From positions 186,001-250,000 of the IMG/VR virus record IMGVR_UViG_3300047994_000374: a stretch of DNA of 64,000 nt; one strand, written 5' to 3'. The position numbers and the translations under genes are program-made. Positions 38,230-64,000 of this stretch are shown piece after piece. The notes under the pieces are model-generated. The model made no database searches. It had not been told where the DNA came from and worked only from the letters and a program-made list of their open reading frames with translations. Every line of letters begins with the position of its first letter. The first letter of the stretch is position 1.

Positions 38230-39531
38230 TTAGAGCTTTTTCTTTTTAAAATCTCCAAATTGATTTCTCGGCGTCTTGTTGTAAGGGATGCCGAATTTAT
38301 CCATTCGATATTTTACTTTCGTCTTATCAACTCCCAACTCCTTTGCTATTTTTCTTATTGAACCAAGTTTATTGTATATTTCTTGTAAATCTACTTTAGA
38401 AATAGTTAGGTGTTCATTTATGCGCCAATCAATATTTAATTTGTTTAAGGCTCTTTGAACGGTCAAATCGGCTAAATTGTATTTTTCAGCAATTAATCGA
38501 ACTGATCCTAGCAATTCAAACTCTTCTTTTAATCTTGTGGGACCTAATATTTCTATTAATTTATTTTCAATAATTTGCTTTTTAAAAAGACCAAATTCTT
38601 TTAATCTTCTTCTCAAAACAATAGTGGACATATGTAGATCTGCCGCCATTAATTTGAATTTTTCTACATTTTGAAATTGTTTATATTTATCAAGGAGCAA
38701 TTCTAATTCTTCTTTTGTTACTTCTATTTTTCTGGGTTTTTGATTTAGAATAATGTCTGCTGCAGCTTTTTTACGATCTAAAAATACTGGGCACCCATCA
38801 TAAATATAATGAATAATTTTAATATTATCTTCTAGATTAGAGCAAGACTGTGCATATAGCGTCGGCTTCCTTTCTTGCAATTGACTTGGATAAATATTTA
38901 ATTTTTTTATTAAATGATTAAAAGCGGACTCTACGCAGTGTTTTGTTCCATATAAAGATATTCTGGAAGAATTATTTTCTTGAAAAATACTTCCGTCGCC
39001 ATCAATTAATCCGGCAATAAAATATCTAATGTTAGGATTATTTTCTAAATGTGTGGGAAACGTATATGTTAAACTTTTAGCTGGGACAATATTGAAGTTT
39101 TTTAAATCTTTGACTATTTGCCGAGAAGTAAATCGTACAGCAGACTGATAGTAGAATTCTTTTTTAAATTCTATCCTTTCATCTGATCTAATTGAATTGA
39201 CAATAGGGGCATTTGTTTTTAAACTGATTTTATATTTTTCTAAATGGGAAATATCTTTTGAAGCTAATTTTAAAGAAATTCTTGGCTTAGTACTATCTAT
39301 ATTTCTATCGGCTGCTAAAAATCCAGCCCAATAAAAAGTTTCAGGAGTATCTCTGCGAAAAAAATCATGATCTACATCATATACAAGTTGTTTCGTATAT
39401 GTAATATTATTCTTTTTGAATAGAATTCGAATAGTTTCTATATTTACATTATAGAATTTGGCAGTTTTTGTTAGCGTTTTTAATTCTTGATATTTTTGAA
39501 TAATTTCATTAATTGGGACGTTTAATTTCAT
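38230..39531 (-). mobile_element. LAGLIDADG homing-endonuclease-like protein with flanking HTH-like repeats
   Basis: Motifs YWAGFLAADRNI and YFIAGLIDGDGSI. HTH-like segments at the N-terminus and several at the C-terminus (e.g. GSIRKIAKELGVDKTKVKYRM). Confidence 0.8.
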
Positions 39532-42776: not shown

Positions 42777-43637
42777 TTATGGGGTATTAATTTTCTTTGC
42801 CTCTTGATATCCAGCTTCCATCATTTCAAGAATAGTTTCATGCTTAAAATCAAGCATGTCTTCAATTAAATTATGTTTTGGTCGAATAACAGTTAATTTT
42901 ACGATTTTTTTATCAATTAGCCCTGCCGAAGCTAATTTATTATACATTTCTACTTTTTCCAAATCATTTGCCATTATTTTATCGGTACTTAAATCGAAAG
43001 CTCGTTTCAAAACATCGACAGTGGTTGGTTTGTGTAGAAATTTATTAACCCTTATTTCAGGGGAAGTGATAATCAAATCGATTTCAGTAGCGCCAGCTTC
43101 AATGGCATCCTTTAAAGGAGACATGGTTTTCAATCCACCGTCGATCCAAAGATGTCCATTAAATTTAACCGGCGTGAACATTCCTGGAAAAGTAGCCGAA
43201 GCAACTACGGCTTCTAAAAACTTGTCATTTGTTTGATCAAAAATATGATACTTGCCCGAACTTAATGAAACAGTTCCGGTGCTGGAATATTTACCTGAAG
43301 CCCTAATTTTATCCAAAGAGATGTGAGTTTTGATCAAGCTCATCAAGGGCGAGCTATCATACATACTTGTTTTCCAAATACCCTGAATACGCCCTAAAAT
43401 TCCCCAGCTCTTATAGATGTCTGACTTTTTTAAATTTTTCCAAAGCTCACTTAATTGAATGGCACCAAGAAATCGCTCTTCGGTCGTAAATTGAGATAGG
43501 AAGGCACAACAAATGGCACCTGAAGAGATGCCACACATGATTTGATAATCGTTTCCAAGGTCATTTATGAGGTGTGATAGGGCTCCGCAGGCGAATGCGG
43601 CTTTTGACCCTCCGCCAGAAATTACTAATGCTCTCAA
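42777..43637 (-). CDS. patatin-like phospholipase
   Basis: Gly-rich SGGGSKA, nucleophile elbow GISSG, and DGG catalytic motif. Confidence 0.9.
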   Translation of the reverse strand: MRALVISGGGSKAAFACGALSHLINDLGNDYQIMCGISSGAICCAFLSQFTTEERFLGAIQLSELWKNLKKSDIYKSWGILGRIQGIWKTSMYDSSPLMSLIKTHISLDKIRASGKYSSTGTVSLSSGKYHIFDQTNDKFLEAVVASATFPGMFTPVKFNGHLWIDGGLKTMSPLKDAIEAGATEIDLIITSPEIRVNKFLHKPTTVDVLKRAFDLSTDKIMANDLEKVEMYNKLASAGLIDKKIVKLTVIRPKHNLIEDMLDFKHETILEMMEAGYQEAKKINTP

Positions 43638-43645
43638 ATAACCTC

Positions 43646-44449
43646 CTATCCTATTTTTTCAATCGTTTCCATAATTTTTTCACTTAGCGATAAATCAAAT
43701 AATAATTTTTCGCCACCAATTACATTTACAAAATGTTCCACTACACAATTTAATGGCTTTTTATCAGATATTTGAATCGGCTCTCCATTTACAGTTAATT
43801 TATTTTCAACCAAATCATCATAAATGAAACACTTCCCATCAAGATCATTTACCTCAAAATACCTTCTTTTTTTTCCAGAATTACCAATCAACATATGATG
43901 ACGAACTTTATTACTATATTCTATATTAATACAATGTTGTTTTCCCGGATAATCATCAATTGTGAAGCCCCTTAATACATTTTTTACATCACCCATTAAA
44001 TCTATGCCCATTGACAAATCATGAGGCGCATAATCTAATAAAGAAGAGTAATTGCGATAAGGTCCGTAATTATGTCCATACGAATCAATTCTTTTTACAT
44101 TAATTGGATCAACTAATGATTTTAACTTTTGGTAAGCGGGGGAAAATAAATGGATATAATTTACAAGAATTGGCGCATGTTTTTCAAATGATTTTATTCG
44201 ATTTATTTCTTGTAAAGATAGGCTGATTGGCTTTTCAATAAGAGTTGGCAAATGATTGGATAAACAGTATTCAGCAATATCTATATGTGATGATGGTGAA
44301 GTTGCAACAATTACAGCATCGCATTTTTTTATAACCTGTTGCCAATCTCTTCGATCGCCCACTTCAAATGGTATTTTTAATTTTCGAAAAACAGAGATAT
44401 AATTTTTACCCCAGGCTCCATTACCGATTAAACATATTGTGGGAAGCAT
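43646..44449 (-). CDS. Gfo/Idh/MocA-family oxidoreductase
   Basis: IGNGAWGK Rossmann motif, H..IA, LIEKPI, DYAPHDLS. Confidence 0.85.
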   Translation of the reverse strand: MLPTICLIGNGAWGKNYISVFRKLKIPFEVGDRRDWQQVIKKCDAVIVATSPSSHIDIAEYCLSNHLPTLIEKPISLSLQEINRIKSFEKHAPILVNYIHLFSPAYQKLKSLVDPINVKRIDSYGHNYGPYRNYSSLLDYAPHDLSMGIDLMGDVKNVLRGFTIDDYPGKQHCINIEYSNKVRHHMLIGNSGKKRRYFEVNDLDGKCFIYDDLVENKLTVNGEPIQISDKKPLNCVVEHFVNVIGGEKLLFDLSLSEKIMETIEKIG

Positions 44450-45496
44450 TTAATAAGTATAATTTTCTTTTGCCCAATTATAAAATCTTTTTAATCCATC
44501 TTCTAAAGAAACTTTTGGAGAGTAATCTAATTCTTTACGAGCTTTTGTAATATCTGGACATCTGCGGTTTGGTTCATCTGCTGGATAACATGCCGGATGA
44601 TTAATAATTTCTCGTTTATTTTTTTGACCCAAAACTGTTTCAAGTGTATTTGCCAATTCAATCATAGAAAGTTCAGGCGTAGGATTTCCAATATTATAGG
44701 GCTGCCCCGCTTTCCCTTTTACGAGAACTCTTAAAAACCCCTCTATTGCATCAGTGACATAACAAAAAGTTCTTGTCTGATTTCCATTACCATAAATAGA
44801 AATGCTTTCATTAGACAATATTTTAGACATGAAATTTGGAAGCACGCGATAATCTTTTTGAAGCATACCAGGTCCAAAAACATTGAATGGGCGGCACATA
44901 TTTGCAGAAACACCGTAAGTTTTATGATAAACGCTAATCATCGTTTCACCTAATCTTTTACTTTCGTCATAGCAGGCTCTTGGTCCTGTACATGAAACGA
45001 AACCTTTATAATCTTCTTTGGTGGGGACGAATTTGGGATCAGGATCGCCATAAATTTCAGATGAGCTAAAAAATAAAAGTTTTGCGTGATTTTGTTTTGC
45101 AAGTTCAAGTGCATGTTTTAATCCGAGCGTCACACATTCCATTGTTTGCAGCGGGAAACTCTGATATTGTTCGGGAGAAGCTATACCCGCAGCTGCCAAA
45201 ACAAAATCAATCTTTTGCTCTGGTTCAAATGGTTTAGTTACATCGTATTGAAGAAATGATAGATTTGCATTTGGTGGAAATTCATTTTTATTAGATGTGA
45301 TAAAATTGTCAAGAGCTACAATTTTACATGGCGTATTTAAAGCCGTTTCATTTAGCTTTATAAAGACACTTGTAAAATATTTACCTAAAAATCCAGAGGC
45401 GCCCGTAATTAAAATTGTTTTACCTTCAAAAGCAGAAGTTAAGTCTTTAATATTGCTACAAATTTCCGTTATATCCGAATCCAATAAAAATGACAT
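44450..45496 (-). CDS. UDP-glucuronate decarboxylase (UDP-xylose synthase)-like SDR
   Basis: GASGFLG, ASPEQY, SSSEIYGDP, GPRACYDESKRLGET, RPFNVFGPGM, QTRTFCYVTD, NIGNP. Confidence 0.85.
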   Translation of the reverse strand: MSFLLDSDITEICSNIKDLTSAFEGKTILITGASGFLGKYFTSVFIKLNETALNTPCKIVALDNFITSNKNEFPPNANLSFLQYDVTKPFEPEQKIDFVLAAAGIASPEQYQSFPLQTMECVTLGLKHALELAKQNHAKLLFFSSSEIYGDPDPKFVPTKEDYKGFVSCTGPRACYDESKRLGETMISVYHKTYGVSANMCRPFNVFGPGMLQKDYRVLPNFMSKILSNESISIYGNGNQTRTFCYVTDAIEGFLRVLVKGKAGQPYNIGNPTPELSMIELANTLETVLGQKNKREIINHPACYPADEPNRRCPDITKARKELDYSPKVSLEDGLKRFYNWAKENYTY

Positions 45497-45498
45497 GA

Positions 45499-46818
45499 TT
45501 ATCTTTCCTCTATAATTGGCAATGGAATAATAAATTTACCACCGAATTTTGAATGGTTTTTAATAATTGATTCAGCAAAATTCCATGCAAGTATTAATAT
45601 AACATCTGCATCTCTATTTTGTGATAGATTGAATCCATAATCATAAATTTGGTTAGTTGTCCAAATACGAATGTGTGTGCCAGGTGTTAATAAATTTTGT
45701 TTTAATGGGCTATCATCAACTATATAATCAATTAATTCATTATCAATACCCAAATAATGTAAAAGCGTAGTTGATTTCGCTGGAGCACCATAACCTACAA
45801 TTCTATTACCTTGTGCTTTAAGTTCTTTTAATCGAGCTTTTAATTCAAATTTAATATCCTTCATTTTATCTGCAAATTCTAAAAATGGTGATACAAAATT
45901 TTTTCCTATAATGTTAAAATTGTTTTTACTTCGCAGCTCGTCCGAAACTTTTAATCCCATATCACTTTCTAACTGTAATAATTTTCCGATAGCTTCTATA
46001 TTAACTGATCGTTCATTCCGATCTTGTCTATATTTATTTTCAACATAAACTCGAATAGAACCGCCGTGAGTATTTACCCTTTCAACATCAAATACTTTCA
46101 TGTGATGTTTATTAAAAAATTCTATCAGGGGCGCGAGATGATGAAAAGAAACGTGTTCATGATAAATATTGTCGAAGTATAATCCATTAATTAAATCTGG
46201 TAAATAAGAAACTTCAAATACAAATACGCCTTCTTTAAATCGAATCAAGTGACTTATATTTTTCGCCATATCATTTAATTTACTTGAATGAGCAAAAACG
46301 TTATTTGCTACAACCACTTTAGCTCCACCATATCCCTCAAATACTTGTTTTTTAGATTTCTCATTTAAAAAATCGGGAATGGTCGGAATACCACGATCTG
46401 TAGCTTGTTTTGCTATATCTTCAGCAGGATCAATGCCAACAACTTTTAAATCAGCATTTTTGAAAAATTGCAAAAGAGTTCCATCATTACTTCCAACATC
46501 AACGACTAAATCATTTCCTTTTAAATCAAGTTTGTTTATTACGGTGGTGGCATAATTTTCAAAATGTTTAACGAAAACTTGACTTGTGCCAGAGACATAT
46601 AAATAATCTTTAAACATCAACTCCGGATTAATAATAACCGATAATTGAACATGACCGCAATCTTGACACTCTAATAAATCAAGTGGATATTTTTTTTGCT
46701 CTAACGGCTCTTTTACAAATGAATTGGCTAATGGTGACTGTGTAACGTGAAGTACATGCTTTAAATTTTGTTTTTCGCATAAATTACAATGCGAAACATA
46801 TGCAAAATCTGAATTCAT
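45499..46818 (-). CDS. NDP-sugar C-methyltransferase (NovU/EryBIII/TcaB9-type)
   Basis: Zn-site CNLC..CQDCGHVQL, DVGSNDGTLL, NNVFAH, IYHEHVSF, HGGSIR, GYGAPAKS, ILAWNF. Confidence 0.9.
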   Translation of the reverse strand: MNSDFAYVSHCNLCEKQNLKHVLHVTQSPLANSFVKEPLEQKKYPLDLLECQDCGHVQLSVIINPELMFKDYLYVSGTSQVFVKHFENYATTVINKLDLKGNDLVVDVGSNDGTLLQFFKNADLKVVGIDPAEDIAKQATDRGIPTIPDFLNEKSKKQVFEGYGGAKVVVANNVFAHSSKLNDMAKNISHLIRFKEGVFVFEVSYLPDLINGLYFDNIYHEHVSFHHLAPLIEFFNKHHMKVFDVERVNTHGGSIRVYVENKYRQDRNERSVNIEAIGKLLQLESDMGLKVSDELRSKNNFNIIGKNFVSPFLEFADKMKDIKFELKARLKELKAQGNRIVGYGAPAKSTTLLHYLGIDNELIDYIVDDSPLKQNLLTPGTHIRIWTTNQIYDYGFNLSQNRDADVILILAWNFAESIIKNHSKFGGKFIIPLPIIEER

Positions 46819-47231
46819 TTTGATCTGACAACCGTTTTTTCATAATTGACGTGATTTTTTGCAATTCCATTCATTGTAATAAATGTGGTATCTTCAAGGA
46901 ATTCCATTTTGTGCCATTTTTCTGGAGGTGAAAAAAACATGTCACCTTGGTTAAAGGTATATTCTTTTAAATTAGAACCATCAATTTCAGATTCAGAATA
47001 TTTAATAGAACCAGAAACAACATAAGCTGAATGCCAATCGCCACCTGTATGATGATGTTGGGCACGAATGCTATCTTTTTTAGATGTAATGATTGTAACA
47101 GACCCTGAATTAGCCAGCCATAAATTCTGAATCACTCCACGATCATCTACGAATGGTTTGTCCAATGGAACTTTAATATCTTCTGGAAATTGACCTGCAT
47201 TAACTAAATCAGCGTATTCTTTATTGTCCAT
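46815..47231 (-). CDS. cupin-fold sugar epimerase/isomerase
   Basis: FVDDRGVI, IRAQHHH, and PPEKWHKMEFLEDT cupin motifs. Confidence 0.75.
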   Translation of the reverse strand: MDNKEYADLVNAGQFPEDIKVPLDKPFVDDRGVIQNLWLANSGSVTIITSKKDSIRAQHHHTGGDWHSAYVVSGSIKYSESEIDGSNLKEYTFNQGDMFFSPPEKWHKMEFLEDTTFITMNGIAKNHVNYEKTVVRSK

Positions 47232-48366
47232 TTTTACCTTTATAGTTTTCGATCATCTTTTCCAATGTAATGATTTGCTTATGAAAAGTAAAGTCCTGCG
47301 CAAAAGAAATTGTTTGTTTTGTGCAGTTATCCCTATATTCTTTATTTTTTAATCCTTTTACTACAAGTTCCGTAAATTCAGACATATATTTTGTGGTTGG
47401 CGTCTTCACTATATGGACTCCACTGTCTTTGTAAATTTGCCCTAAACTATCTTGCTCTGAAATTACGGTATAGCACTCTGCATACATATTTTCTAATATT
47501 GAGCTTGAAAATCCTTCGGTAAAAGTAGGTGTTGATGTCGGGTATGCTAATACTTCTGTTTTCAACATCGCTTTATACATGTCCAATTTACTTGTATTTT
47601 TATGATGATTAATATTTAAATCTTTCATTTTATTTAAGGCATATTTAATATATTCTGCCCTATTTTTAAATTCACGCATTATTAAAGAGCTATTTCTATC
47701 TACTGATTTCAAAGAACCATACCACTTGTCAAAATCGTAATAAATATTTAATGAGCTATATGGAATTTCTTTATTAATCTTTGGGAATTCTTGAAGCAAA
47801 AGATGAAGTCCTCGATCGGGTGAAGAACAATATAAAATACTTCCTGGTATTTTCTCATAATCGTAAAGTTCTTTTTTTGCCCGCTCAAATATTTCCTCAT
47901 CAATACAATTTGGCATTACTTTCCACTTGTTATGACTATGAGGTGTAAATTGTTTAATATATTCTTGATGACTTTCCGATGGGCTAATGAAAATATCTAC
48001 AAAATTTTCGAATCCGCTTTGACAATATCCAAAATCATTAAGTTGCTGAAAACAAATTTTTAATGCTTGTTTGGGTGAATAACGCATCATATCGGGTTCA
48101 TTAAAAGAAATTACGACATCGGGAGGCACTCTTCCTAAATATAAATCTTGAAGTTGATGAAGTCCAATATTTTCCCAATTTTTTAATGAGCGCTCTGAAA
48201 TATTTGTATATAATGAAACTTGATGAGCAGAATTTTTAGCAAGGTATTTTGCAACTCCAAAACATTGTCCCTCTGAACCTGTAAGACTTTGATTTGCATA
48301 TAAGTCGGTAAAATCAAATTTTTTAGAGCCAGATGAAAATGGGCCATAAATAATTTCTATTTTCAT
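47221..48366 (-). CDS. GT-B (GT4-like) glycosyltransferase
   Basis: GSE motif, YCSSPDRGLHLL, EGFSSSILE (ExF..E). Paralogous to the C-terminal domain of the adjacent 1141-aa gene. Confidence 0.8.
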   Translation of the reverse strand: MKIEIIYGPFSSGSKKFDFTDLYANQSLTGSEGQCFGVAKYLAKNSAHQVSLYTNISERSLKNWENIGLHQLQDLYLGRVPPDVVISFNEPDMMRYSPKQALKICFQQLNDFGYCQSGFENFVDIFISPSESHQEYIKQFTPHSHNKWKVMPNCIDEEIFERAKKELYDYEKIPGSILYCSSPDRGLHLLLQEFPKINKEIPYSSLNIYYDFDKWYGSLKSVDRNSSLIMREFKNRAEYIKYALNKMKDLNINHHKNTSKLDMYKAMLKTEVLAYPTSTPTFTEGFSSSILENMYAECYTVISEQDSLGQIYKDSGVHIVKTPTTKYMSEFTELVVKGLKNKEYRDNCTKQTISFAQDFTFHKQIITLEKMIENYKGKNGQ

Positions 48367-51300
48367 TCTCTATCCATAATTGGTTTATATGGTTTTAAAA
48401 AATAATTGTTTACAGATTTATTAAACATTTCATTCCACGACTTAGCAACATCATTCCAATTAAAATGTTCGCTTGCATATTTTATTAATTCTTCTCTGTC
48501 TTCACCTTTGGTATTTTTCATGGCGTGAATAATAGCTTTGGCGAAATTATTTTGATATTCTTCAGATAGCCAATCACCAGCAATCATATCTCCACGTAAC
48601 CCTACCGTTTCATTTAATGCGGCAATTGGAGATGTTACAATTTTTAATCCTGCCATCTGAGCTTCGATGGCGCCGATGCAAGATGTCTCAGTAAACCATG
48701 TAGAAAATGGCCACACTCCAGCTGATTTATAAGCCTTCGCTAATTGATGTTGATTCACTCTTCCATGATAATGAATTCCCATATGAGACATTGATTTTAT
48801 TTGATTTTCTAGATCTTCAATTAATTTTAGTTGTCCAGCATCAACGGTTGCTTTTTTCCAATAATCAAAACCATAATAAATGTGTAACTCGGCATCATTA
48901 ACGGCTTCTCTTACTTTTGGCCAAATTTTTAATAAAGATGGCAAATATCTATCTGGTGAACTGCTTATCACTGCTTTATGAGGATTTCTTTCTACATCAA
49001 CATTAAATCTTTCTAGATCAATTCCATTTTGTGTAATAATAATTTGATCTTCTTTTAAAAATTTATGATGATGCAGTATATTTTGTTTATGCCATTCAGT
49101 TAAAGCAAAAATTTTATACGCTTCATTTGCAAGTTCTTCAGTTAATCCTTTTGGAACAACATCATGAACCCATAAATATTTCGCTTTTGCTTTAATATTC
49201 AACTTGCTATTTAAAGCTTGAGCAAAACGAGATACAACTAAAATGTCACATTTAATATCGTGAAATTTAGCTGTTTTATAATATTCTACGCCCGAATAAA
49301 TTCCTTCTCCCCATTCTCCGCAAGAAGAATAAACGCGAACTTTATTTCCTAATGCTGCTAATCTTTTTGACATTTCAATTGCCGCTAATTCAGATCCACC
49401 AATACCATGAATGTCAACTGAATGAGGCGTCCAATTTTCAAGTCCGTCCCCAATAAAAAATACAATATCTTTTGATTGATCAGTAGTTGGTGGATTTGGC
49501 CAAGCTTCGACGCAAACATTACCTTGATCGGGAACGTCTGGATACCATTGAGGTACTGCTGTACAATCTTTTACCCACCAGCCTGCTTTTCTAAAATGTG
49601 CTGCCACGCTCCAAACGGAAGGCGCGACTAAGTGTCCTCTATTTTTATCAGCGAGCCAATGATTACCCTCATTTGCCCATAACCAAGGATGTGCATGTTC
49701 TGAAAACTGTCCTCTAAACCAGGCGCCATGAGGAGTGACCATCATCATTTTGCCGTCGTCTTTAACTAATTTCCGTGCGGGCGCTAATAAATCTTTTACA
49801 GGGTCGATTAAATGTTCATACACATCTCCACAAGTAATGTAATCAAATTTCTCGCCATTTAAAGTTTCAGGGGCGGCTTCGAAATAAGTCTGAATGTGTC
49901 TTGCCCCAGTATTAAATTCAATTGCTTTTTCATTTGCAATTTTAATCGAATTCGTGCAACAATCAACTCCGGTAACATTTTTCCAGCCCTTCATTCCCCA
50001 TCGATTCGTCATCTGTCCATCGATACAAGCCATATCGAGCAATTTTTTATTTTTATCTGGAATACGATCTGTGAGCCACACATATCTTGCATACGCTCCC
50101 CCCTGCAATTCCATCGTTAAGGGCGTCATATCTGTTTTTAACAAATCCCCATTATTATCAATAGTAGAGTTGCCCTTATCATAAGCCTCTTCATCGTTAA
50201 TCCAAGATGTAAATGCTCTTGTCTTCTTTAATAATGTTTCAGTTTCATTGGTATGTCTAACACGATAGGGCGCATTTTCCAATAAACTAATTGCTGATAA
50301 CACTTCATCATGCAACATATACTCTTTCCACATTGCAACCAATAATGTTTGCAACTGTGCGTCTGTCATTTTAAGTGGCAAATCATCATACACAAATGTC
50401 TCAGGAATGCCCCAAGCCTGTGAATGCGGCGTAACTTTAGCAGTTGGAAAGTCTGATGCTGTTACATTTTTTGGATAACCATTTGGACGATGATACTTTG
50501 GCCAATCATATTCAGACATAACTTCGCCTTCATTCATAGTAATAGTTGAATCAGTGTTTGTAATAAGACTAATAATTTGATTCTTTTTACTATCTGATAA
50601 TTGATTTAAGTTAATTAAATTTTCTAATCCTTCGACAACTTTAAATTTTGCTATTTCAGTTTCATAAATTCTTTTATTTAATAATAAAGCTTCGTCGTCT
50701 GGTGCAACTTTTAATGCTGTATCGACCATAGCCAAAGCTTCCGTAATATTACCGACACGATTTAATGCAAAGTTTAAATATCTATATATTTCTAAATCTC
50801 TTTCAGAATTATTAACAAAAAGAAGTGTGTTTGTCCGTGGTAAAGATAATCCAATTTTTCCATAATTAATACATTTGTTCCAATTATTATTTTCTTGCGC
50901 CCCACCTTTTTGAGCAATAAAATAATAAGCTTTGGAAAGTGAAAAGTAAGCCTCTGCCCAATTTTCTTTAATTCGAATCGCCTTAAAAGCTAATTCAATT
51001 ACTTCTTCATAATTACTTGTAAATATAGCATAATCAATTAATTTTAAAATTGCCATATACTTTTCATCATCCCAACCGCTTAATTCAAGATAACGATTTA
51101 AAAACTTTTTAGATGTTTCAAGATCTCCAACATTTCCATATTCAAGTCCTAAATAATACAAATGACGAGCATCACTTTCACCCATGTCTTCATACATTTT
51201 TTTAAGAATCCGAAGATTACGATTTTGTTCAATTGGTTTTTGAATTATATCTCGTTTGTGATCGAAAACTACATCATCCATTTGTTGAATGTAATTTCCC

Positions 51301-51788
51301 TTGCTACCATCTTTTGGAATTAATACTTCATGAACGCGATTAACCCATTTATAAACATGTTTATTATTTATTAAACGCTCTCGATAATGACGACATGTTA
51401 CATTTCCATGTTTATCTTTTGAATATAAATAAGGAAATGCAATACAAACGTCTCCTTGATGACTTTCAAATTTTTTAATAATAGCGTTTAATTTTTCAGC
51501 ATGTAAAATCTGGTCGTCTGAATCTGCCCAAAAAATCCACTTTTTTGTAGCTAAATCAAAGCTTCGTTGACGAGCTTTGGAAAAATCGGCTATTAAACCG
51601 TTTTCATCATTACATTCCGTATACACTTCAAAAATATCAGCATATTTTCGTGCAATATTTGGCGTGTCATCCGAGGATCCAGTATCTACTATAACCAATT
51701 CTTCTACATATGGGCGAATTGATTTGAGACACTCTTCTAAATATGGTTCATTTTTAACAATTATACAGCAACTTACTGGAGCTTTCAT
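48363..51788 (-). CDS. multidomain GT2 - TPR - SAM methyltransferase - GT4-like protein
   Basis: GT2 (SCCIIVKNE, IVDTGSSD, WADSDD, VHEVL). TPR-like helices (ARHLYYLGLEY.., WAEAYFSLSKAY). MTase (LLDMACIDG, VTGVD, DVYEHLIDP). GT-B (GIGGSE, SSSPDR, ETSCIGAIEAQMAG). Confidence 0.85.
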   Translation of the reverse strand: MKAPVSCCIIVKNEPYLEECLKSIRPYVEELVIVDTGSSDDTPNIARKYADIFEVYTECNDENGLIADFSKARQRSFDLATKKWIFWADSDDQILHAEKLNAIIKKFESHQGDVCIAFPYLYSKDKHGNVTCRHYRERLINNKHVYKWVNRVHEVLIPKDGSKGNYIQQMDDVVFDHKRDIIQKPIEQNRNLRILKKMYEDMGESDARHLYYLGLEYGNVGDLETSKKFLNRYLELSGWDDEKYMAILKLIDYAIFTSNYEEVIELAFKAIRIKENWAEAYFSLSKAYYFIAQKGGAQENNNWNKCINYGKIGLSLPRTNTLLFVNNSERDLEIYRYLNFALNRVGNITEALAMVDTALKVAPDDEALLLNKRIYETEIAKFKVVEGLENLINLNQLSDSKKNQIISLITNTDSTITMNEGEVMSEYDWPKYHRPNGYPKNVTASDFPTAKVTPHSQAWGIPETFVYDDLPLKMTDAQLQTLLVAMWKEYMLHDEVLSAISLLENAPYRVRHTNETETLLKKTRAFTSWINDEEAYDKGNSTIDNNGDLLKTDMTPLTMELQGGAYARYVWLTDRIPDKNKKLLDMACIDGQMTNRWGMKGWKNVTGVDCCTNSIKIANEKAIEFNTGARHIQTYFEAAPETLNGEKFDYITCGDVYEHLIDPVKDLLAPARKLVKDDGKMMMVTPHGAWFRGQFSEHAHPWLWANEGNHWLADKNRGHLVAPSVWSVAAHFRKAGWWVKDCTAVPQWYPDVPDQGNVCVEAWPNPPTTDQSKDIVFFIGDGLENWTPHSVDIHGIGGSELAAIEMSKRLAALGNKVRVYSSCGEWGEGIYSGVEYYKTAKFHDIKCDILVVSRFAQALNSKLNIKAKAKYLWVHDVVPKGLTEELANEAYKIFALTEWHKQNILHHHKFLKEDQIIITQNGIDLERFNVDVERNPHKAVISSSPDRYLPSLLKIWPKVREAVNDAELHIYYGFDYWKKATVDAGQLKLIEDLENQIKSMSHMGIHYHGRVNQHQLAKAYKSAGVWPFSTWFTETSCIGAIEAQMAGLKIVTSPIAALNETVGLRGDMIAGDWLSEEYQNNFAKAIIHAMKNTKGEDREELIKYASEHFNWNDVAKSWNEMFNKSVNNYFLKPYKPIMDRE

Positions 51789-51822: not shown

Positions 51823-52260
51823 TTAATAAAATGGCAAAAATCTGAAAGTTCCGTTAATTGTTACTTCAAGATATCCAGTGGGTAATGTTGGAAGAGCATC
51901 AGCTGATCCTGGAGGCGGAGCGGTTGGAACAATTCCATTCGGTGGTACAGTTAAATATAAACCACTATCATCACTGAATTGTGAATCTTTTATTACAAGA
52001 CTTACATCTCCATCAGCGGTTCCTAATGTCACTACTGCTCCGCTTATATTTGTAAAATTTCCACCTTGAAGAGTTAGTCCATTGTTTGCTATCACTCCAG
52101 GAGCGCTAATATTACCAGTACAACCTAAACTTGTTAAAGTTAAACCGGTAATTGTGGTTGGCGAATACTCTGATCCATCCCGCATTATAAATTGACCGCC
52201 TGCGGGGCGATTTGGTGAAACTGGAAAGCCTTGAATTGCTGATACAACTTTATTCCTTAT
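51823..52260 (-). CDS. small fibre-type protein; 5' end ambiguous
   Basis: The track ORF starts at 52185, but the frame is open and protein-like from at least 52260 (IRNKVVSAIQGFPVSPNRPAGGQFIM). Ends with the fibre-like GYLEVTINGTFRFLPFY. Confidence 0.55.
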   Translation of the reverse strand: MRNKVVSAIQGFPVSPNRPAGGQFIMRDGSEYSPTTITGLTLTSLGCTGNISAPGVIANNGLTLQGGNFTNISGAVVTLGTADGDVSLVIKDSQFSDDSGLYLTVPPNGIVPTAPPPGSADALPTLPTGYLEVTINGTFRFLPFY

Positions 52261-52350
52261 AAATCTGACATGCTTGCCTTAAAGTATTTAGTGAATAGCG
52301 AAAATTGCTATTGATACTTTAAATATATCGAGGTGATTTAGAAATTTTTA

Positions 52351-53811
52351 TTAAATCCAATAACTATCAAATGTTGCGGTCATTAGAAAGCTACCCGAGC
52401 CTGGTAATGCGGTTGCAACGTTCTTTGCGACGATGGCAACGAATTCGCCCGGATTAACGGCAATTGGTGAGTTAAAGGGCATATAAATACCTTCTTGGCT
52501 TCCTACAGTTGCTGCGGTCGCTGTGCTTGAGTACACTTCAATTCCAAGTGGTACTCGGCGAGGAGCTTTAGTTGTTGGATTAGTAGTGAAGCTTGTACCT
52601 TCTGCAGTTACCATTGAAACTGCTGTATGACCGAAAGCTAATGAATAAACATAAATTATTGGGTTAGTTGTTACCGCCACATAACATACAGACATAATTT
52701 TAACACCCGTTATCATTAAAATACGAGGTTTAATTGCTACAGTGGGAAGTGAATTTTGATAACTAAAAACAATACCATCAGTTCCTATTGGCGGGTTCGC
52801 TGCGGCGGAGATCAAAGCTTGTCCACCTAAACCGGTTACAAGCGCCCCTGTATTATTAAGAACGTTACCGGCGCCGATCGCTCCTACAGCATTAGGAAAG
52901 TTAGCCGATGAACCTTGCGTGGAGCCTGCAATGCCCTGTTGTCCGGTCAATCCTTCCGCACATTGTTGATGGGCGAATGGCATTGCAAGTTGCATTTCTA
53001 AATAAGTAAGATGACAATTTCCAACTTTTAATTGAGCGGGTGTTCCAACTACTACGCCACTATTTCTTTGTTGAAAACAAATTGGTAAACCACCAGATAA
53101 AAATGGCTCTGCATTTCCTGATGGAACTGTCATTATAGCATATAAAACGCCATCAATCCAAAACTCTACACCTCGGATTGTCATTTCTATTACAAATGCG
53201 CTAGCGCTCCCTACAGTATATGGAGTTCCAGTAAATTGTTGTGCAGTTTCGGCTCCATTATAGTTAAGAACGCCAAATACTCCGGCAGATGTTATTCTAT
53301 AATAAACTCCGTCGGCGGGTGCAGATGTATTTGTTGCTAAAAATAATCCAAACTCAATTATTTGGTTTGCAAGCATAGGTAAAGAAATAATACATGTTGC
53401 TTCAAATCTTTGCCCACCATGACCTTCAATTTCAAAAGTACGCCAAGTTTGTAAAGATACGCCCGTAGTTGTAGCAAGTGTGCTATTGGCATTTAATTGT
53501 AAAAAACCGCCAGATTGGGAGGCAGTCATTGTAGTAAATGAATATTTCCAAACGCCAGTATCTTGGGCAGTTGCATTGAATAAATAATCAAAAATACCAG
53601 TATCAATACCAACAAATAGACGTTCTCCGCGAGATGTATTTGGAGATCTTCTTAATGGAGTTCCCGTTACTGTTCCAGTATCTAACTCACTAACTGCGAC
53701 GGCATAACCAGCTTTTTCGATGTCAGTTGCAAGGTTAACTTTTAAATTATTCTCACTATCAACTTCTGCTACGTTACCTGAGGTATTTCCTTCAATTCTA
53801 AAACCTGCCAT
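52351..53811 (-). CDS. virion protein with putative concanavalin/LamG-like beta-sandwich
   Basis: 486 aa, beta-rich (GVYYRITSAGVFGVLNY..FVIEMTIRGVEFWIDG), located within the fibre gene cluster. Confidence 0.5.
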   Translation of the reverse strand: MAGFRIEGNTSGNVAEVDSENNLKVNLATDIEKAGYAVAVSELDTGTVTGTPLRRSPNTSRGERLFVGIDTGIFDYLFNATAQDTGVWKYSFTTMTASQSGGFLQLNANSTLATTTGVSLQTWRTFEIEGHGGQRFEATCIISLPMLANQIIEFGLFLATNTSAPADGVYYRITSAGVFGVLNYNGAETAQQFTGTPYTVGSASAFVIEMTIRGVEFWIDGVLYAIMTVPSGNAEPFLSGGLPICFQQRNSGVVVGTPAQLKVGNCHLTYLEMQLAMPFAHQQCAEGLTGQQGIAGSTQGSSANFPNAVGAIGAGNVLNNTGALVTGLGGQALISAAANPPIGTDGIVFSYQNSLPTVAIKPRILMITGVKIMSVCYVAVTTNPIIYVYSLAFGHTAVSMVTAEGTSFTTNPTTKAPRRVPLGIEVYSSTATAATVGSQEGIYMPFNSPIAVNPGEFVAIVAKNVATALPGSGSFLMTATFDSYWI

Positions 53812-53847
53812 ATTATTCCTCGCTTATTTAATACAAAAAAATTACTA

Positions 53848-54243
53848 TTAGTTCCATATCCAATTAACTAAAAATTGTCCCGTTAATCTTAATTGCGTTA
53901 CAGCTGTAATTGTAAAACCAACTCCTGGCACAATCGTATTACAATTAAAAATTACTCCAGTTGATACAAGGATATGTTCCGTAATATTATGATCTGCCGT
54001 ATGCCCATCCATCATAAAAGCCTGCACTAATGATGTCGATAAAATGCCAGTTTGACCCGTTACAATAGTTGTTACTACGTTTGTTCCTGGAGCAGATCCA
54101 AAACTTATTATGGCTGTACCTTTATTGCCAATGCCTGCCCCAGTTGCGCCTGTAGGTCCAATTGATCCTGTAACACCCTGAGGTCCAATTGCTCCAGTAA
54201 CTCCTTGTGGTCCAATATTACTTTTAGCTGATCCTTGACTCAT
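53848..54243 (-). CDS. short collagen-stalk fibre protein
   Basis: 131 aa with about 9 GXY triplets followed by a ~90-aa beta domain. Confidence 0.7.
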   Translation of the reverse strand: MSQGSAKSNIGPQGVTGAIGPQGVTGSIGPTGATGAGIGNKGTAIISFGSAPGTNVVTTIVTGQTGILSTSLVQAFMMDGHTADHNITEHILVSTGVIFNCNTIVPGVGFTITAVTQLRLTGQFLVNWIWN

Positions 54244-54244
54244 G

Positions 54245-54574
54245 TTATGTTAATTCCACTCCAAAAATAGAAAATGAAAGAGTACCTAAATCAGCATAAA
54301 CCCTTACAACATCTGTAGTAGCTAATGTTATACCAATTGTTGCAATGAAAGTGTCATTACCAGCTATTGGAAGATCATAATATAAATACTGGCTTGCTGT
54401 ATCTGCTGCACCTGCTGTTGCAACAGATATTCTAAATGCTGTGGTAGTGCCAGATTGATTGCAAACTACAATAGATGAAACCGTCGTTGAAGTAACTGAT
54501 GGTACGGTATATAAAGCAGTTAATGTTGCCGCGACTGGAAATGCTTGTCCCAGCACTTTGATTGAATCCGTCAT
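54245..54574 (-). CDS. 109-aa beta-sandwich protein adjacent to collagen (fibre tip/partner candidate)
   Basis: KVLGQAFP..LYTVP..IVVCNQ..YLYYD..ITLATTDVVRVYA..SFSIFGVE. Starts immediately after the collagen stop. Confidence 0.6.
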   Translation of the reverse strand: MTDSIKVLGQAFPVAATLTALYTVPSVTSTTVSSIVVCNQSGTTTAFRISVATAGAADTASQYLYYDLPIAGNDTFIATIGITLATTDVVRVYADLGTLSFSIFGVELT

Positions 54575-56068
54575 TTATGCTCCCATTAGTAAGAAAGTTC
54601 GTTCAAAAGAATTATTACTTGTTCCACCGCCAGCTGGTCCAGTTACACCTGGTGATCCTTGAATGCCTTGTGCTCCAGTTGTTCCTCGCGGACCTGTGGC
54701 GCCAGTAACACCAGGATTCCCTTGTGGACCGGTAAAACCAGTAAATCCTGTAACTCCAGGAATACCCTGTGAACCTTGTGCTCCTTGAGGTCCTGTTGCT
54801 CCTGTAATACCCTGAATGCCTGTTGCTCCTTGAATTCCAGCTGCGCCTTGAGGTCCTGTTACGCCTTGAATTCCTTGAGCACCAGTAGGTCCTGTAACCC
54901 CAGTTACACCTTGAATACCTTGAGGTCCAGTAGGTCCAGTTAGTCCAGTTACACCTTGAATACCCTGAATACCTTGAACACCAGTCACTCCTTGAGAGCC
55001 AGTTACACCTTGAATTCCTTGAGTGCCTTGAGGTCCGGTAGCACCTGTTAATCCTTGAATGCCAGTTGCTCCTTGAGGACCAATAGATCCAGTTACACCC
55101 TGTATTCCTTGATTCCCTTGAGCACCAGTGTTTCCCTGAATTCCCTGGGATCCTTGCGGACCTGTACTACCAGTAACTCCTTGTATTCCTTGAACACCTT
55201 GTGGTCCAGTTGAACCGGTAACTCCTTGTATTCCTTGAACACCTTGTGGTCCAATAGATCCTTGAGGTCCTATTGAACCTTGAGGTCCGGTAGGTCCTGT
55301 GGCTCCAGTTATGCCTTGTATACCTTGCGCTCCCTGAACCCCAGTGGCTCCTTGTGGTCCCGTTGCTCCTGTAATACCTTGAACTCCTTGTGGTCCTACC
55401 GATCCTGTTGGACCTTGAGCGCCAGTTGCGCCAACTGGACCTATTGCACCAGTTAAGCCAGTAATTCCTGGAGATCCTTGGATGCCTTGAATTCCAGCTC
55501 CAGTGACTCCGGGCGATCCTTGAATACCTTGTGATCCCGTTGGCCCAGTAGCGCCAGTAACTCCCTGTATACCTTGAATTCCTTGAATGCCTGTAAGTCC
55601 AATAGGTCCCTGTGGGCCAGTTGCTCCTGTTAAACCTGTAACTCCAGGTGAACCTTGATTGCCTTGTGGCCCAGTTGATCCAGTTACACCCTGAATACCT
55701 TGGGGTCCTTGAATTCCAGTAGCCCCCTGAATACCTTGAATGCCGGTAGCTCCTTGTGGTCCTGTTGCACCAGTTAAGCCTTGAATGCCAGTAGCTCCAA
55801 TTGGGCCCGTATATCCTGGACCAGTTGCACCTTGAGGTCCAGTTGCTCCAGTTAAACCCGGATTTCCTTGAGGACCTTGAACTCCTTGGGCGCCTTGAGG
55901 TCCAATAACTCCCTGAAGACCTTCAATACCTTGAGGTCCTTGAGGCCCTTGAATACCTTGAGGTCCAGTAGGTCCGCCCGGTGGTCCAATAGGTCCAGTA
56001 GCTCCTTGAGGTCCCGTAAAACCAGAAGTAGAGCCTTTAATTTGATCGGAATTTACGCGAGTTACCAT
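54575..56068 (-). CDS. collagen-like fibre protein
   Basis: 497 aa; ~465 residues of continuous Gly-X-Y (Y mostly Thr/Gln) with short terminal peptides, ending [10 protein letters not shown]. Confidence 0.9.
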
Positions 56069-56153
56069 TTAAATTATTTGTATTATACAATCGCATATAA
56101 TACTCTCTATATTAATACTATGATAGTGGTAAGTTTATTTTATAAATAAAAAA

Positions 56154-57883
<1,730 letters not shown>

Positions 57884-57884
<1 letters not shown>

Positions 57885-58771
57885 TATAAATAATAAATCA
57901 GGAATAACAAACCCGACCCTCCCGTTCCACCTGCGCCACCATTACCTGAGGTGCTACTTGAATTTCCACCGCCTCCGCCGCCGCCACCTCCTGCGCCAGT
58001 ATTTGCAAATGGAGATCCGCCACCTGTTCCTGCACTTGCAGTACCTCCGTTAGATCCATTTCCACCAGTGCCGCCATTACCGCCGACTCCAAAATCAGAT
58101 GAACCGCCTCCGCCACCTCCATCGCCACCTAAACCTGTGACAGTAGTTCCAGAAGCTGCGCCTGTAGAAATGCTTGAATTCATGGCGGAAGGAAACCCAT
58201 TTTGTCCAGAAATATTTGCACTCTGTAACCAAGTGTTTCCACCATTTCCACCAGATCCTAATGTTGGCCATAAGAGAATTCCTGGAGTTCCCTGTGTTCC
58301 AACACCATTATTTGCAATAGTTCTATTTGGATAGCCGCCAATGGCAAATCCACCACCCGACGCAAATGAAAGATTATCTTGACCTGGGCCACCACCGCCA
58401 CCACCTGCACCAGGAAAGACAACAGTAAACGACCCGTTAACAAATAATGTATCTCCACCCGATCCTCCACCACCACCAGTTGAGTTATTAGCAGAAGCAC
58501 CAGCCCCAGAAGTTCCTCCAGTACCAATTGTAATAGTATAAACAAGTCCAGGAGTAACAGAAACGGGTATTAATCTAGTAATTGCCCCTCCTCCACCAGA
58601 CCCTCCCCCGGCGCGTTGAGTAGTAGAAACAGTATTAGCCCCACGTCCTCCGCCACCACCACCGCCACCACCACCACAAGCTTTAAGATAAATACTTTTA
58701 ATACCCATAGGACAAGTCCAACTGCCAGATGTAAGATATGTAATAACTACAGTCATTGTATTATCCACCAA
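57884..58771 (-). CDS. glycine-rich protein, single module
   Basis: Same module as the downstream gene ([30 protein letters not shown]...GLLFLIYYL). The start may be the second Met, 58756. Confidence 0.85.
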
Positions 58772-63999: not shown

Positions 64000-64000
64000 T

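What the first reader, a model, noticed from the sequence alone, without database searches (positions are those of the whole stretch)
48363..51788. Four-module glycan assembly enzyme: GT2 + TPR + SAM methyltransferase + GT4 in one chain
Seen: the four motif sets occur in this order in 1141 aa. Established: GT2-TPR architectures occur in bacterial protein O-glycosyltransferases (flagellin and spore-surface types), and chlorovirus PBCV-1 A064R fuses two GTs with a methyltransferase to build and cap its capsid glycan. Inference: the protein initiates on protein Thr/Ser (GT2-TPR), extends (GT4) and methylates (MTase), an assembly line analogous to the giant-virus enzyme but in a tailed phage. The MTase motif I reads DMACIDG rather than the usual DxGCxxG.
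Basis: partly seen in the sequence, partly recalled or inferred. Interest (0 to 1): 0.7.

Follow-up and report, generated by a model that had tools for sequence, protein, structure and literature searches.

The report
Huge-phage fibre glycan assembly enzyme
A 394-kb tailed phage encodes one 1141-residue protein joining two sugar-transferases, a TPR-like helical domain and a methyltransferase. It sits in an operon directly after the phage's only collagen-like fibre genes, so it most likely sugar-coats those fibres; this is inferred, not demonstrated.

Summary
Window 48363-51788 (-) is one intact 1141-aa ORF. Its domains, in order, are a GT2/GT-A domain, a TPR-like helical domain, a helical plus class I SAM-methyltransferase module, and a GT4-type GT-B domain. 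Pfam, PDB sequence searches and a confident AlphaFold model (pLDDT 89.8) agree. Catalytic motifs are invariant across 39 relatives: DxDD, GIGGSE and EX7E. The odd motif I (DMACIDG) is real. It is a subclade variant of a family-wide DxGCxDG, and the methyltransferase is the best-conserved domain in that subclade.

The protein is not a one-off. More than 250 full-length relatives exist, mostly on phage contigs of up to about 480 kb.

The GT2-TPR half is closest to enzymes that glycosylate proteins or peptides (GmaR, SunS, ThuS).

The genome's only two collagen-like genes lie just upstream. Their repeats are G-X-T/G-X-Q. In 25 of 31 close relatives a collagen-like gene sits upstream on the same strand, and almost never downstream.

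A further glycosyltransferase and a C-methyl-sugar pathway follow downstream.

Best reading (about 0.55): a cytoplasmic prime-extend-cap enzyme that O-glycosylates the phage's collagen-like fibres. It is analogous to BclA/SgtA and to chlorovirus A064R, but not homologous to A064R. The acceptor and sugars are untested.

The parts
48363..51788 (-). Whole ORF, 1141 aa (P0001): GT2 - TPR-like - helical+MTase - GT4
51234..51788 (-). GT2 / GT-A domain, aa 1-185. DTGSSDD is at aa 35-41. The DxDD motif is at aa 89-92 (window 51513-51524).
   Evidence: Pfam E 2.4e-17. GmaR 1.5e-16, ThuS and SunS. D89/D91/D92 are invariant in 39 sequences.
50556..51233 (-). TPR-like all-helical domain, aa 186-411. The invariant SGWDDE loop is at aa 237-242 (window 51063-51080).
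   Evidence: AF2 helices H190-H409. Foldseek alignment to whole SunS/ThuS chains and to P42460. Pfam TPR is sub-threshold.
50508..50555 (-). Disordered linker, aa 412-427
   Evidence: pLDDT below 50
49479..50507 (-). Helical sub-domain (segment aa 428-575; the helices lie at ~476-575) plus class I SAM methyltransferase (aa 576-770). Motif I DMACIDG is at aa 585-591 (window 50016-50036).
   Evidence: Five Pfam MTase families above cut-off. Domain model pLDDT 94. Foldseek hits UbiG, RebM, AtmM. The module occurs as a separate ORF in L036, L041 and L043.
48366..49478 (-). GT4-type GT-B domain, aa 771-1141. GIGGSE is at aa 795-800. EX7E is at aa 1034-1042 (window 48663-48689).
   Evidence: Pfam. 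Foldseek hits MshA, PimA, BshA, PIG-A. E1034 and E1042 are invariant.
47221..48366 (-). Stand-alone GT-B glycosyltransferase, 381 aa. Its start overlaps the stop of the main ORF by 4 nt.
   Evidence: conserved downstream partner in most loci
46815..47231 (-). Cupin protein, 138 aa; probable sugar-nucleotide isomerase or epimerase
45499..46818 (-). NDP-sugar 3-C-methyltransferase homologue, 439 aa
   Evidence: Methyltransf_13/14. MtmC 1.5e-69, KijD1, TcaB9.
44450..45496 (-). Short-chain dehydrogenase (SDR), 348 aa, closest to UDP-glucuronate decarboxylase (UDP-xylose synthase)
   Evidence: E 1.5e-59
43646..44449 (-). GFO/IDH/MocA oxidoreductase, 267 aa; probable sugar ketoreductase or dehydrogenase
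42777..43637 (-). Patatin-like phospholipase, 286 aa. It is syntenic with the cluster in many relatives; its role is unknown.
54575..56068 (-). Collagen-like protein, 497 aa. Y position is Q 46% and T 38%. Proposed acceptor.
58753..64000 (-). Giant collagen-like protein. The frame is about 1951 aa in the genome and runs off the window. Y position is T 47% and Q 37%, with a globular C-terminal domain. Proposed acceptor.
51823..54574 (-). Four ORFs between the collagen genes and the enzyme: 109 aa (tail-fibre-like), 131 aa, 486 aa (phage-only, possibly a lectin-like beta-sandwich) and 120 aa. The 109-, 131- and 486-aa ORFs recur in related loci.
56154..58771 (-). Two tail-fibre / minor-tail-like genes (576 and 295 aa) between the two collagen genes

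Best explanation
The ORF encodes a soluble, cytoplasmic, single-chain glycan assembly enzyme of a huge (394 kb) contractile-tailed phage. It is co-transcribed with the phage's collagen-like fibre genes and with a small sugar-nucleotide and glycosyltransferase operon.

Most likely mechanism:
1. The N-terminal GT2 domain, held against its TPR-like domain as in GmaR, SunS and ThuS, recognises the unassembled collagen-like fibre protein. It transfers the first sugar to threonines in the Y position of the G-X-T repeats. GT2 enzymes invert, so the linkage would be beta (established family knowledge).
2. The C-terminal GT4 domain extends the glycan. GT4 enzymes retain, so the linkage would be alpha. 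The neighbouring 381-aa GT-B enzyme also extends it, probably with a C-methyl-branched sugar made by the downstream genes.
3. The central methyltransferase O-methylates a sugar hydroxyl, probably as a chain cap.

Shown here: the domain identities, the intact catalytic motifs, the conserved synteny, and the fusion/fission of the MTase module.

Inferred: the acceptor, the linkage, the donor sugars, the order of steps and the capping role.
For: Architecture and intact active sites:
- Pfam and the AF2 model at pLDDT 89.8.
- DxDD, GIGGSE and EX7E are invariant in 39 relatives.

The GT2-TPR half resembles protein and peptide glycosyltransferases:
- Apart from consensus/designed TPR proteins, the PDB sequence matches at E<=0.01 were GmaR (1.5e-16), ThuS, SunS and, weakly (E 0.008), GalT1.
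- SunS and ThuS are the top Foldseek hits over about 400 columns.
- The best NCBIfam hit is the SunS family.

The enzyme is soluble and has no export machinery nearby:
- The maximum 19-residue Kyte-Doolittle hydropathy average is 1.15, so no transmembrane helix is predicted.
- No transporter or lipid-carrier genes are nearby.

Context:
- The gene sits in the structural module, with the tail sheath at 17878-20664 and tail-fibre-like genes close by.
- All 47 collagen Pfam matches in the 394-kb genome fall in two ORFs directly upstream.
- Their Y positions are 38-47% Thr.
- In 25 of 31 close relatives with at least 4 kb of upstream sequence, a collagen-like ORF lies upstream on the same strand. 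Across all 62 loci with at least 4 kb of downstream sequence, 1 has a collagen-like ORF downstream.
- Pooled Y-position Thr is 44% over 9873 triplets.

Precedent:
- C. difficile SgtA, a GT-A enzyme encoded next to bclA3, adds beta-O-GlcNAc to Thr of GPT collagen repeats (PMC7157674).

MTase coupling:
- The same helical+MTase module is internal in this protein, C-terminal in L091, and a separate downstream ORF in L036, L041 and L043.
- Four-module and three-module forms are interleaved on the tree.

Capping precedents: A064R domain 3 and WsaE.
Against: - There is no biochemical or proteomic evidence of any kind.
- Synteny shows functional linkage, not enzyme-substrate identity.
- In 6 of 31 close relatives, and in nearly all distant relatives (smaller phages), no collagen-like gene lies within 10 kb upstream. 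The family as a whole therefore cannot be tied to collagen acceptors.
- The nearest structural relatives, SunS and ThuS, are S-glycosyltransferases acting on Cys, and the collagen repeats contain no Cys.
- Motif I is non-canonical (DMACIDG), so SAM binding is assumed rather than shown.
- Relative domain placement in the model is uncertain (pTM 0.63).
- The complex prediction gave no answer.
Confidence: 0.55

Rival explanations
1. The enzyme glycosylates other virion proteins (capsid, decoration, sheath or tail tube) rather than the collagen-like fibres, or in addition to them. This would resemble mycobacteriophage virion glycosylation.
For: - A three-module relative in a 42.6-kb podovirus lies directly after the scaffold-like protein, the major capsid protein and a 165-aa ORF, with no collagen gene nearby.
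- Distant relatives mostly lack collagen neighbours.
- Phage capsid and tail-tube glycosylation is documented (Freeman et al. 2023, as cited in PMC12619734).
Against: In the huge-phage clade that contains this window, collagen adjacency is near-universal and directional. The only collagen genes of the genome flank the operon.
Confidence: 0.15
2. The operon remodels a host surface polysaccharide (LPS O-antigen or capsule) to block superinfection. This is how glycosyltransferase clusters of jumbo phages have been interpreted.
For: - A published interpretation of jumbo-phage sugar and GT clusters reads them this way (PMC7824862).
- GT4 and GT2 enzymes and methyl caps are typical of ABC-transporter-dependent O-antigen assembly. 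WsaE is one precedent.
- Bacteroidota genomes carry five-module relatives.
Against: - No polyprenyl-phosphate priming enzyme, flippase, ABC transporter or ligase was found among the neighbours scanned.
- The gene sits inside the structural and fibre module, not among early or moron genes.
- The GT2-TPR half is nearest to protein-acting enzymes.
Confidence: 0.13
3. The enzyme builds a free or small-molecule-linked methylated oligosaccharide. That product would be a secondary metabolite or a polymer like the methylmannose polysaccharide, not a protein glycan.
For: - The MTase is nearest to small-molecule and sugar O-methyltransferases: UbiG, RebM, AtmM, MitM.
- The GT-B domain matches the methylmannose-polysaccharide mannosyltransferase 7qsg, among many other GT4 enzymes.
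- The C-methyl sugar genes resemble antibiotic deoxysugar pathways.
Against: - This reading does not explain the TPR-like domain.
- It does not explain the tight, directional collagen synteny or the position in the structural module.
Confidence: 0.07
4. The enzyme hypermodifies phage DNA bases with methylated sugars.
For: Phage glycosyltransferases often act on DNA (as cited in PMC12619734).
Against: - No base-hydroxymethylation or DNA-metabolism genes lie in the operon.
- The location is structural, and the TPR and GmaR/SunS affinities point to protein acceptors.
Confidence: 0.03

Closest known systems
GmaR (Listeria flagellin O-GlcNAc transferase, by general knowledge) and the glycocin S-glycosyltransferases SunS and ThuS
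   Same: An N-terminal GT2/GT-A domain is directly followed by a TPR-like helical domain. These are the best sequence matches (E 1.5e-16, 5e-10 and 1e-8) and fold matches for aa 1-400. The DxD motif is conserved.
   Different: - Those enzymes are about 420-640 aa with one catalytic domain; here an MTase and a GT4 domain are fused on.
- Identity is only 17-30%.
- The score against the SunS equivalog model is far below its cut-off (45.9 against 350 bits).
- SunS and ThuS act on Cys, and GmaR also serves as an anti-repressor.
BclA / BclA3 collagen-like spore glycoproteins with SgtA (Bacillus, C. difficile)
   Same: A collagen-like surface fibre with Thr-rich G-X-T repeats is encoded next to a soluble GT-A glycosyltransferase. 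SgtA is shown to O-glycosylate those threonines (PMC7157674). BclA also appears among the PDB matches of the collagen protein (1wck).
   Different: - SgtA is a 358-aa single-GT enzyme with no TPR, MTase or GT4 module.
- The system here is viral, and its fibres reach about 1950 aa.
- Homology between SgtA and this GT2 domain was not tested.
Chlorovirus PBCV-1 A064R
   Same: A virus-encoded single chain with two glycosyltransferase domains plus a class I methyltransferase. It extends and methyl-caps the virus's own structural-protein glycan (PMC9614988).
   Different: - A064R has 638 aa, its domain order is GT-GT-MTase, and it has no TPR domain.
- Its GT domains belong to other families (one GT-A described as GT34-like, and one novel family).
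- It acts on N-glycans of a capsid protein in a eukaryotic host.
- No A064R chain appeared among the PDB sequence matches. The likeness is convergent design, not membership.
Geobacillus stearothermophilus WsaE (S-layer glycan)
   Same: A soluble trifunctional enzyme with one methyltransferase and two glycosyltransferase domains. The 2-O-methylation caps the chain (PMC2943079).
   Different: - In WsaE the MTase is N-terminal and there is no TPR domain.
- It works on a lipid-linked glycan that is exported and then transferred by an oligosaccharyltransferase. None of that machinery is present here.
Five-module GT2-TPR-MTase-GT2-GT4 proteins of Bacteroidota and Acidobacteriota (uncharacterised)
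   Same: The same end domains are about 35-39% identical, and TPR and MTase modules lie between them.
   Different: - They carry an extra internal GT2 domain.
- They are chromosomal, with no collagen synteny (only small opposite-strand collagen-like ORFs in two loci).
- Their function is unknown.

Membership tests
GT2 (GT-A fold, inverting) glycosyltransferases | Pfam PF00535 above the gathering score | tested here: met
   63.8 bits against 23.3
GT2 (GT-A fold, inverting) glycosyltransferases | DxD metal / nucleotide-sugar motif conserved | tested here: met
   D89-S-D91-D92; D89/D91/D92 are invariant in 39 sequences
GmaR/SunS-type GT2-TPR protein glycosyltransferases | GT-A domain contiguous with a TPR-like helical domain, matching over both | tested here: met
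   Foldseek aligns 383-404 columns to whole SunS/ThuS chains, E about 2e-14
GmaR/SunS-type GT2-TPR protein glycosyltransferases | Reaches the curated equivalog score (TIGR04195 SunS family) | tested here: not met
   45.9 bits against a cut-off of 350. It is a distant relative, not an orthologue.
GmaR/SunS-type GT2-TPR protein glycosyltransferases | Acceptor is a protein or peptide side chain | not testable with these tools
   Only synteny with collagen-like genes is available
TPR repeats | Pfam TPR model above the gathering score | tested here: not met
   The best hit is TPR_14 at 19.3 against 23.5. Some relatives do pass.
TPR repeats | Stack of antiparallel helix pairs | tested here: met
   Ten helices between aa 190 and 409 at pLDDT about 90. 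Matches consensus TPR proteins at E 2e-4 and P42460.
Class I SAM-dependent methyltransferases | Pfam MTase models above the gathering score, and the Rossmann-like seven-strand fold | tested here: met
   Five families pass. The strand-helix order fits. Foldseek hits UbiG, RebM and AtmM.
Class I SAM-dependent methyltransferases | Canonical motif I (D/E-x-G-x-G-x-G) | tested here: not met
   The motif reads D-M-A-C-I-D-G. The family consensus is D-x-G-C-x-D-G. Only D585, D590 and G591 are invariant.
Class I SAM-dependent methyltransferases | Acidic residue at the end of strand 2 (ribose binding) | tested here: met
   D609 is conserved in at least 90% of sequences
GT4 (GT-B fold, retaining) glycosyltransferases | Glycos_transf_1 / Glyco_trans_1_4 above the gathering score, and a two-Rossmann GT-B fold | tested here: met
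   27.9 against 26.4 and 30.6 against 27. Foldseek hits MshA, PimA and BshA with target-normalised TM-scores up to about 0.7.
GT4 (GT-B fold, retaining) glycosyltransferases | EX7E motif | tested here: met
   E1034 and E1042 are invariant
Chlorovirus A064R-like enzymes | Sequence homology of the catalytic domains | tested here: not met
   No A064R chain appeared among the PDB matches at E<=0.01. Only the design principle is shared.
BclA/SgtA-type collagen-like glycoprotein systems | Thr-rich G-X-T collagen-like protein encoded next to a soluble GT-A enzyme | tested here: met
BclA/SgtA-type collagen-like glycoprotein systems | O-glycan actually present on the collagen threonines | not testable with these tools
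   Needs virion glycoproteomics

The most novel reading that the evidence does not exclude
A large clade of huge phages (about 150-480 kb) runs a self-contained glycoprotein-fibre system like that of BclA. The virions would carry collagen-like 'hairs' up to about 2000 residues long. Their G-X-T threonines would be decorated in the host cytoplasm with methyl-capped glycans containing C-branched sugars. A single-chain enzyme would prime, extend and cap the glycan, using a phage-made sugar nucleotide. This would be the bacteriophage counterpart of the autonomous glycosylation machinery of giant eukaryotic viruses.
Probability: 0.45. Interest if true: 0.75.

Novelty: new variant of a known kind. 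Interest (0 to 1): 0.62.

Why it matters
Virus-encoded glycosylation of a virus's own structural proteins is well documented for giant eukaryotic viruses and for a few mycobacteriophages. It has not been described for the collagen-like fibres of huge phages.

If the inference holds, this family gives a compact, soluble enzyme for making methyl-capped O-glycans on collagen-like scaffolds.

It would also offer an explanation for the role of the very long collagen-like genes in huge phages, such as glycan-mediated adhesion, shielding or host recognition.

It challenges the default reading that sugar gene clusters in jumbo phages serve to remodel the host surface.

The repeated fusion and fission of the methyltransferase module is a natural experiment on how such assembly lines are built.

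Tried and rejected
- Near-identical DNA search against the phage collection found nothing.
- The complex prediction of GT2-TPR (aa 1-411) with the first 120 residues of the 497-aa collagen-like protein gave a 'no answer' verdict with score 0.00. The partner's own fold was uncertain. This is not evidence either way.
- The PDB sequence search with the GT-B domain alone found nothing at E<=0.01. The fold search was needed instead.
- I tested whether the odd motif I marks a decaying MTase and rejected the idea. The MTase is the best-conserved domain among the closest relatives, at 64-84% identity against 46-66% for GT2.
- I tested whether the Swiss-Prot top hit P42460 (Synpcc7942_0270) is the characterised cyanobacterial pilin Ogt. 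It is not: that enzyme is Synpcc7942_0051, a GT41.
- I considered whether the phage belongs to the published 'moraphage' lineage. This was not established; those genomes reach only 307 kb.
- Literature searches for a description of this collagen-plus-GT module in jumbo phages found none.
- The 486-aa upstream ORF has no Pfam, PHROG, NCBIfam or PDB match. Only a weak lectin / GH16-like structural lead emerged.

Full report
**1. The observation**

Window 48363-51788 on the minus strand is one uninterrupted ATG-started ORF of 1141 aa, kept as P0001. An AAGG lies two bases before the ATG. The stop overlaps the next gene's start by 4 nt.

Pfam finds the following:
- Glycos_transf_2 at aa 6-143 (E 2.4e-17).
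- Five class I methyltransferase families at aa 577-737, all above their cut-offs.
- Glyco_trans_1_4 and Glycos_transf_1 at aa 952-1107, both just above cut-off.
- Only sub-threshold TPR hits at aa 208-377.

An AlphaFold2 model built on 39 relatives is confident, with mean pLDDT 89.8. It resolves these parts:
- a GT-A domain, aa 1-~180;
- ten paired helices, aa 190-410;
- a disordered linker, aa 412-427;
- a helical sub-domain (aa ~476-575) packed before a Rossmann-type MTase (aa 577-765);
- a two-lobed GT-B domain, aa 774-1128.

**2. Are the catalytic sites intact?**

In an alignment of 39 full-length relatives at 41-69% identity, the following are invariant or nearly so:
- the GT2 nucleotide-binding DTGS-D and the DxDD motif (D89, D91, D92);
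- the GT-B glycine loop GIGGSE (aa 795-800);
- the GT4 EX7E motif (E1034, E1042).

The wider family reads D-x-G-C/S-x-D-G, so the whole family lacks the middle glycine of the canonical motif. The window's protein and its five nearest relatives additionally have Ala for the first Gly.

This is not decay. Within that subclade the MTase is the most conserved domain, at 64-84% identity against 46-66% for GT2. The ribose-binding acidic residue D609 is also kept.

A domain-only model (pLDDT 94) matches UbiG, the sugar O-methyltransferases RebM and AtmM, and other small-molecule MTases.

**3. What are the parts related to?**

For aa 1-420, apart from consensus/designed TPR proteins, the PDB sequence matches at E<=0.01 were:
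- GmaR, 1.5e-16 (known from the literature as the Listeria flagellin O-GlcNAc transferase);
- ThuS and SunS, S-glycosyltransferases that glycosylate Cys of glycocin peptides;
- weakly (E 0.008), a chain deposited as 'putative glycosyltransferase (GalT1)'.

By fold, whole SunS and ThuS chains, including their helical C-terminal domains, are the top PDB hits. An uncharacterised cyanobacterial GT2-TPR protein is the top Swiss-Prot hit.

The C-terminal domain matches retaining GT4 enzymes: MshA, PimA, BshA, PIG-A, Agl16 and CotSA.

The protein has no hydrophobic segment long enough for a membrane helix.

**4. The genome and the neighbourhood**

The window is bases 186001-250000 of a 394,192-bp IMG/VR virus record estimated 92% complete. 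A tail-sheath homologue and several tail-fibre-like genes lie in the window.

All genes from about 64000 down to about 42800 are on the minus strand with short or overlapping junctions. In transcription order they are:
- a giant collagen-like protein, about 1951 aa in the genome;
- two tail-fibre / minor-tail-like proteins;
- a 497-aa collagen-like protein;
- four small or unknown ORFs;
- the 1141-aa enzyme;
- a 381-aa GT-B enzyme;
- a cupin;
- a sugar 3-C-methyltransferase (MtmC 1.5e-69);
- an SDR closest to UDP-glucuronate decarboxylase (1.5e-59);
- a GFO/IDH/MocA oxidoreductase;
- a patatin-like protein.

No transporter, flippase or lipid-carrier glycosyltransferase was found nearby.

All 47 collagen Pfam matches in the whole 394-kb genome fall in the two ORFs just upstream. 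Their G-X-Y triplets carry Thr (38-47%) and Gln (37-46%) in the Y position.

**5. The family and its synteny**

More than 250 protein clusters match full-length, many on contigs of 120-480 kb. I analysed 74 IMG/VR loci and four assembly loci with 10-kb flanks.

| Set of loci | Collagen-like ORF upstream, same strand | Collagen-like ORF downstream |
|---|---|---|
| Close relatives (GT2 domain at least 45% identical), at least 4 kb upstream | 25 of 31 | not split by this set |
| Four-module form | 13 of 15 | 0 of 16 |
| Three-module form | 15 of 41 | 1 of 46 |

Here 'collagen-like' means at least 45 residues of G-X-Y.

Pooled over 9873 triplets, the Y position is 44% Thr. Downstream, the GT-B enzyme, cupin, C-methyltransferase, SDR, GFO oxidoreductase and patatin genes recur.

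Two architectures coexist: the four-module form and a three-module form of about 800-890 aa without the MTase. In L036, L041 and L043 the helical+MTase module is a separate downstream ORF. In L091 it is fused at the C-terminus instead.

On a tree of the shared domains, the two forms are interleaved within one supported clade. This kind of fusion and fission is the classic sign that the MTase acts in the same pathway as the two transferases.

More distant three-module relatives sit in smaller phages, mostly without collagen genes. In a 42.6-kb podovirus the gene follows the scaffold-like and major capsid genes.

In bacterial genome collections, the close hits are phage-like contigs binned into MAGs, with the same synteny. 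Chitinophaga and other Bacteroidota and Acidobacteriota carry five-module GT2-TPR-MTase-GT2-GT4 relatives at about 35-39% identity in the shared GT2 and GT-B domains.

**6. Mechanism**

The best-supported reading is that the enzyme glycosylates the phage's own collagen-like fibre proteins in the cytoplasm before or during assembly:
1. GT2-TPR primes Thr.
2. GT4 and the neighbouring GT-B enzyme extend the chain.
3. The MTase caps it.

Precedents exist for each step:
- SgtA, a GT-A enzyme encoded beside bclA3, puts beta-O-GlcNAc on Thr of GPT collagen repeats (PMC7157674).
- A064R of chlorovirus combines two transferases with a capping MTase (PMC9614988).
- WsaE of Geobacillus does the same for an S-layer glycan (PMC2943079).

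The domain identities, motif conservation, synteny and fusion/fission are shown here. The acceptor, sugars, linkage, order and capping role are inferred. I put the collagen-fibre reading at about 0.55.

**7. Rivals**

- Other virion proteins as acceptors (0.15). This fits the small-phage relatives.
- Host surface-polysaccharide remodelling (0.13). This is how jumbo-phage sugar clusters have been read (PMC7824862). However, no export or lipid-carrier genes are present, and the gene lies in the fibre module.
- A free or small-molecule-linked methylated glycan (0.07).
- DNA hypermodification (0.03).

**8. Comparison and novelty**

The protein works like a GmaR/SunS-type protein glycosyltransferase fused to a GT4 extender and a capping MTase.
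- It is a member of GT2, of GT4 and of the class I MTases.
- It is not an orthologue of SunS (45.9 against 350 bits).
- It is not homologous to A064R.

I found no paper describing this module in phages. I rate it a new variant of a known kind: virus-encoded, multi-domain glycosylation of the virus's own structural proteins. It is widespread, uncharacterised, and readily testable.

Noticed in passing
P0005 (and P0002, P0013, P0014, P0026, P0067, P0093 by their Pfam lists), aligned to window aa 1036/1037 = window ~48678-48683: Several homologues of about 1500 aa carry an intein with a homing-endonuclease domain. In P0005 it is inserted exactly inside the GT4 EX7E catalytic motif (TETS | intein | C-I-x-x-x-E). 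An intein in a glycosyltransferase active site is unusual and marks that site as highly constrained.
   Followed up: partly
window 43646-47231 (-): The downstream genes combine an SDR closest to UDP-glucuronate decarboxylase (E 1.5e-59), a cupin, an MtmC/TcaB9/KijD1-type sugar 3-C-methyltransferase (E 1.5e-69) and a GFO/IDH/MocA oxidoreductase. This suggests the phage makes a C-methyl-branched sugar nucleotide, possibly from a 4-keto-pentose intermediate. No nucleotidyltransferase is present in the cluster.
   Followed up: partly
window 42777-43637 (-): A patatin-like phospholipase gene is syntenic with the glycosylation cluster in many related phage loci (L002, L015, L017, L018, L037, L038, L043; upstream of the enzyme in L024, L025, L041). 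Its role is unknown.
   Followed up: no
window 58753-64000 (-) and PDB 8zxl / 9ius: In a PDB sequence search with the last 174 residues of the giant collagen-like protein, the collagen repeats at their start match best a solved 780-aa chain named 'spindlefibril | axialfibril' (E 4e-68). I could not establish the biological context of that entry. BclA (1wck) is also among the matches.
   Followed up: partly
window 54000-64000: GC content rises from about 33% to about 50% across the collagen-like genes. This is expected from the GGN/CCN/ACN-rich repeats and need not mean foreign origin.
   Followed up: no
L091:9989-13300; L100, L096, L098, L095: Domain shuffling occurs in the family. One phage-like contig has the order GT2-TPR-GT4-MTase. 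Chromosomal proteins of Chitinophaga, other Bacteroidota and Blastocatellia have GT2-TPR-MTase-GT2-GT4.
   Followed up: partly
window 38230-39531 (-) and 34591-35682 (-): An endonuclease with an HNH-like C-terminus and an Eco57I / N6-type DNA methyltransferase lie a few kb downstream of the glycosylation cluster, in a low-GC stretch (about 30%).
   Followed up: no
window 52351-53811 (-): The 486-aa ORF between the collagen genes and the enzyme is phage-specific and recurs in related loci (L001, L024, L091). Atlas structure neighbours hint at a GH16 / concanavalin-like beta-sandwich, possibly a fibre-tip lectin. This is a lead only.
   Followed up: partly
G000:C1 158786-159277, 163024-163338, 390721-391116: The same phage genome carries three further small glycosyltransferase genes (two GT2, one GT-B) outside the window.
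   Followed up: no
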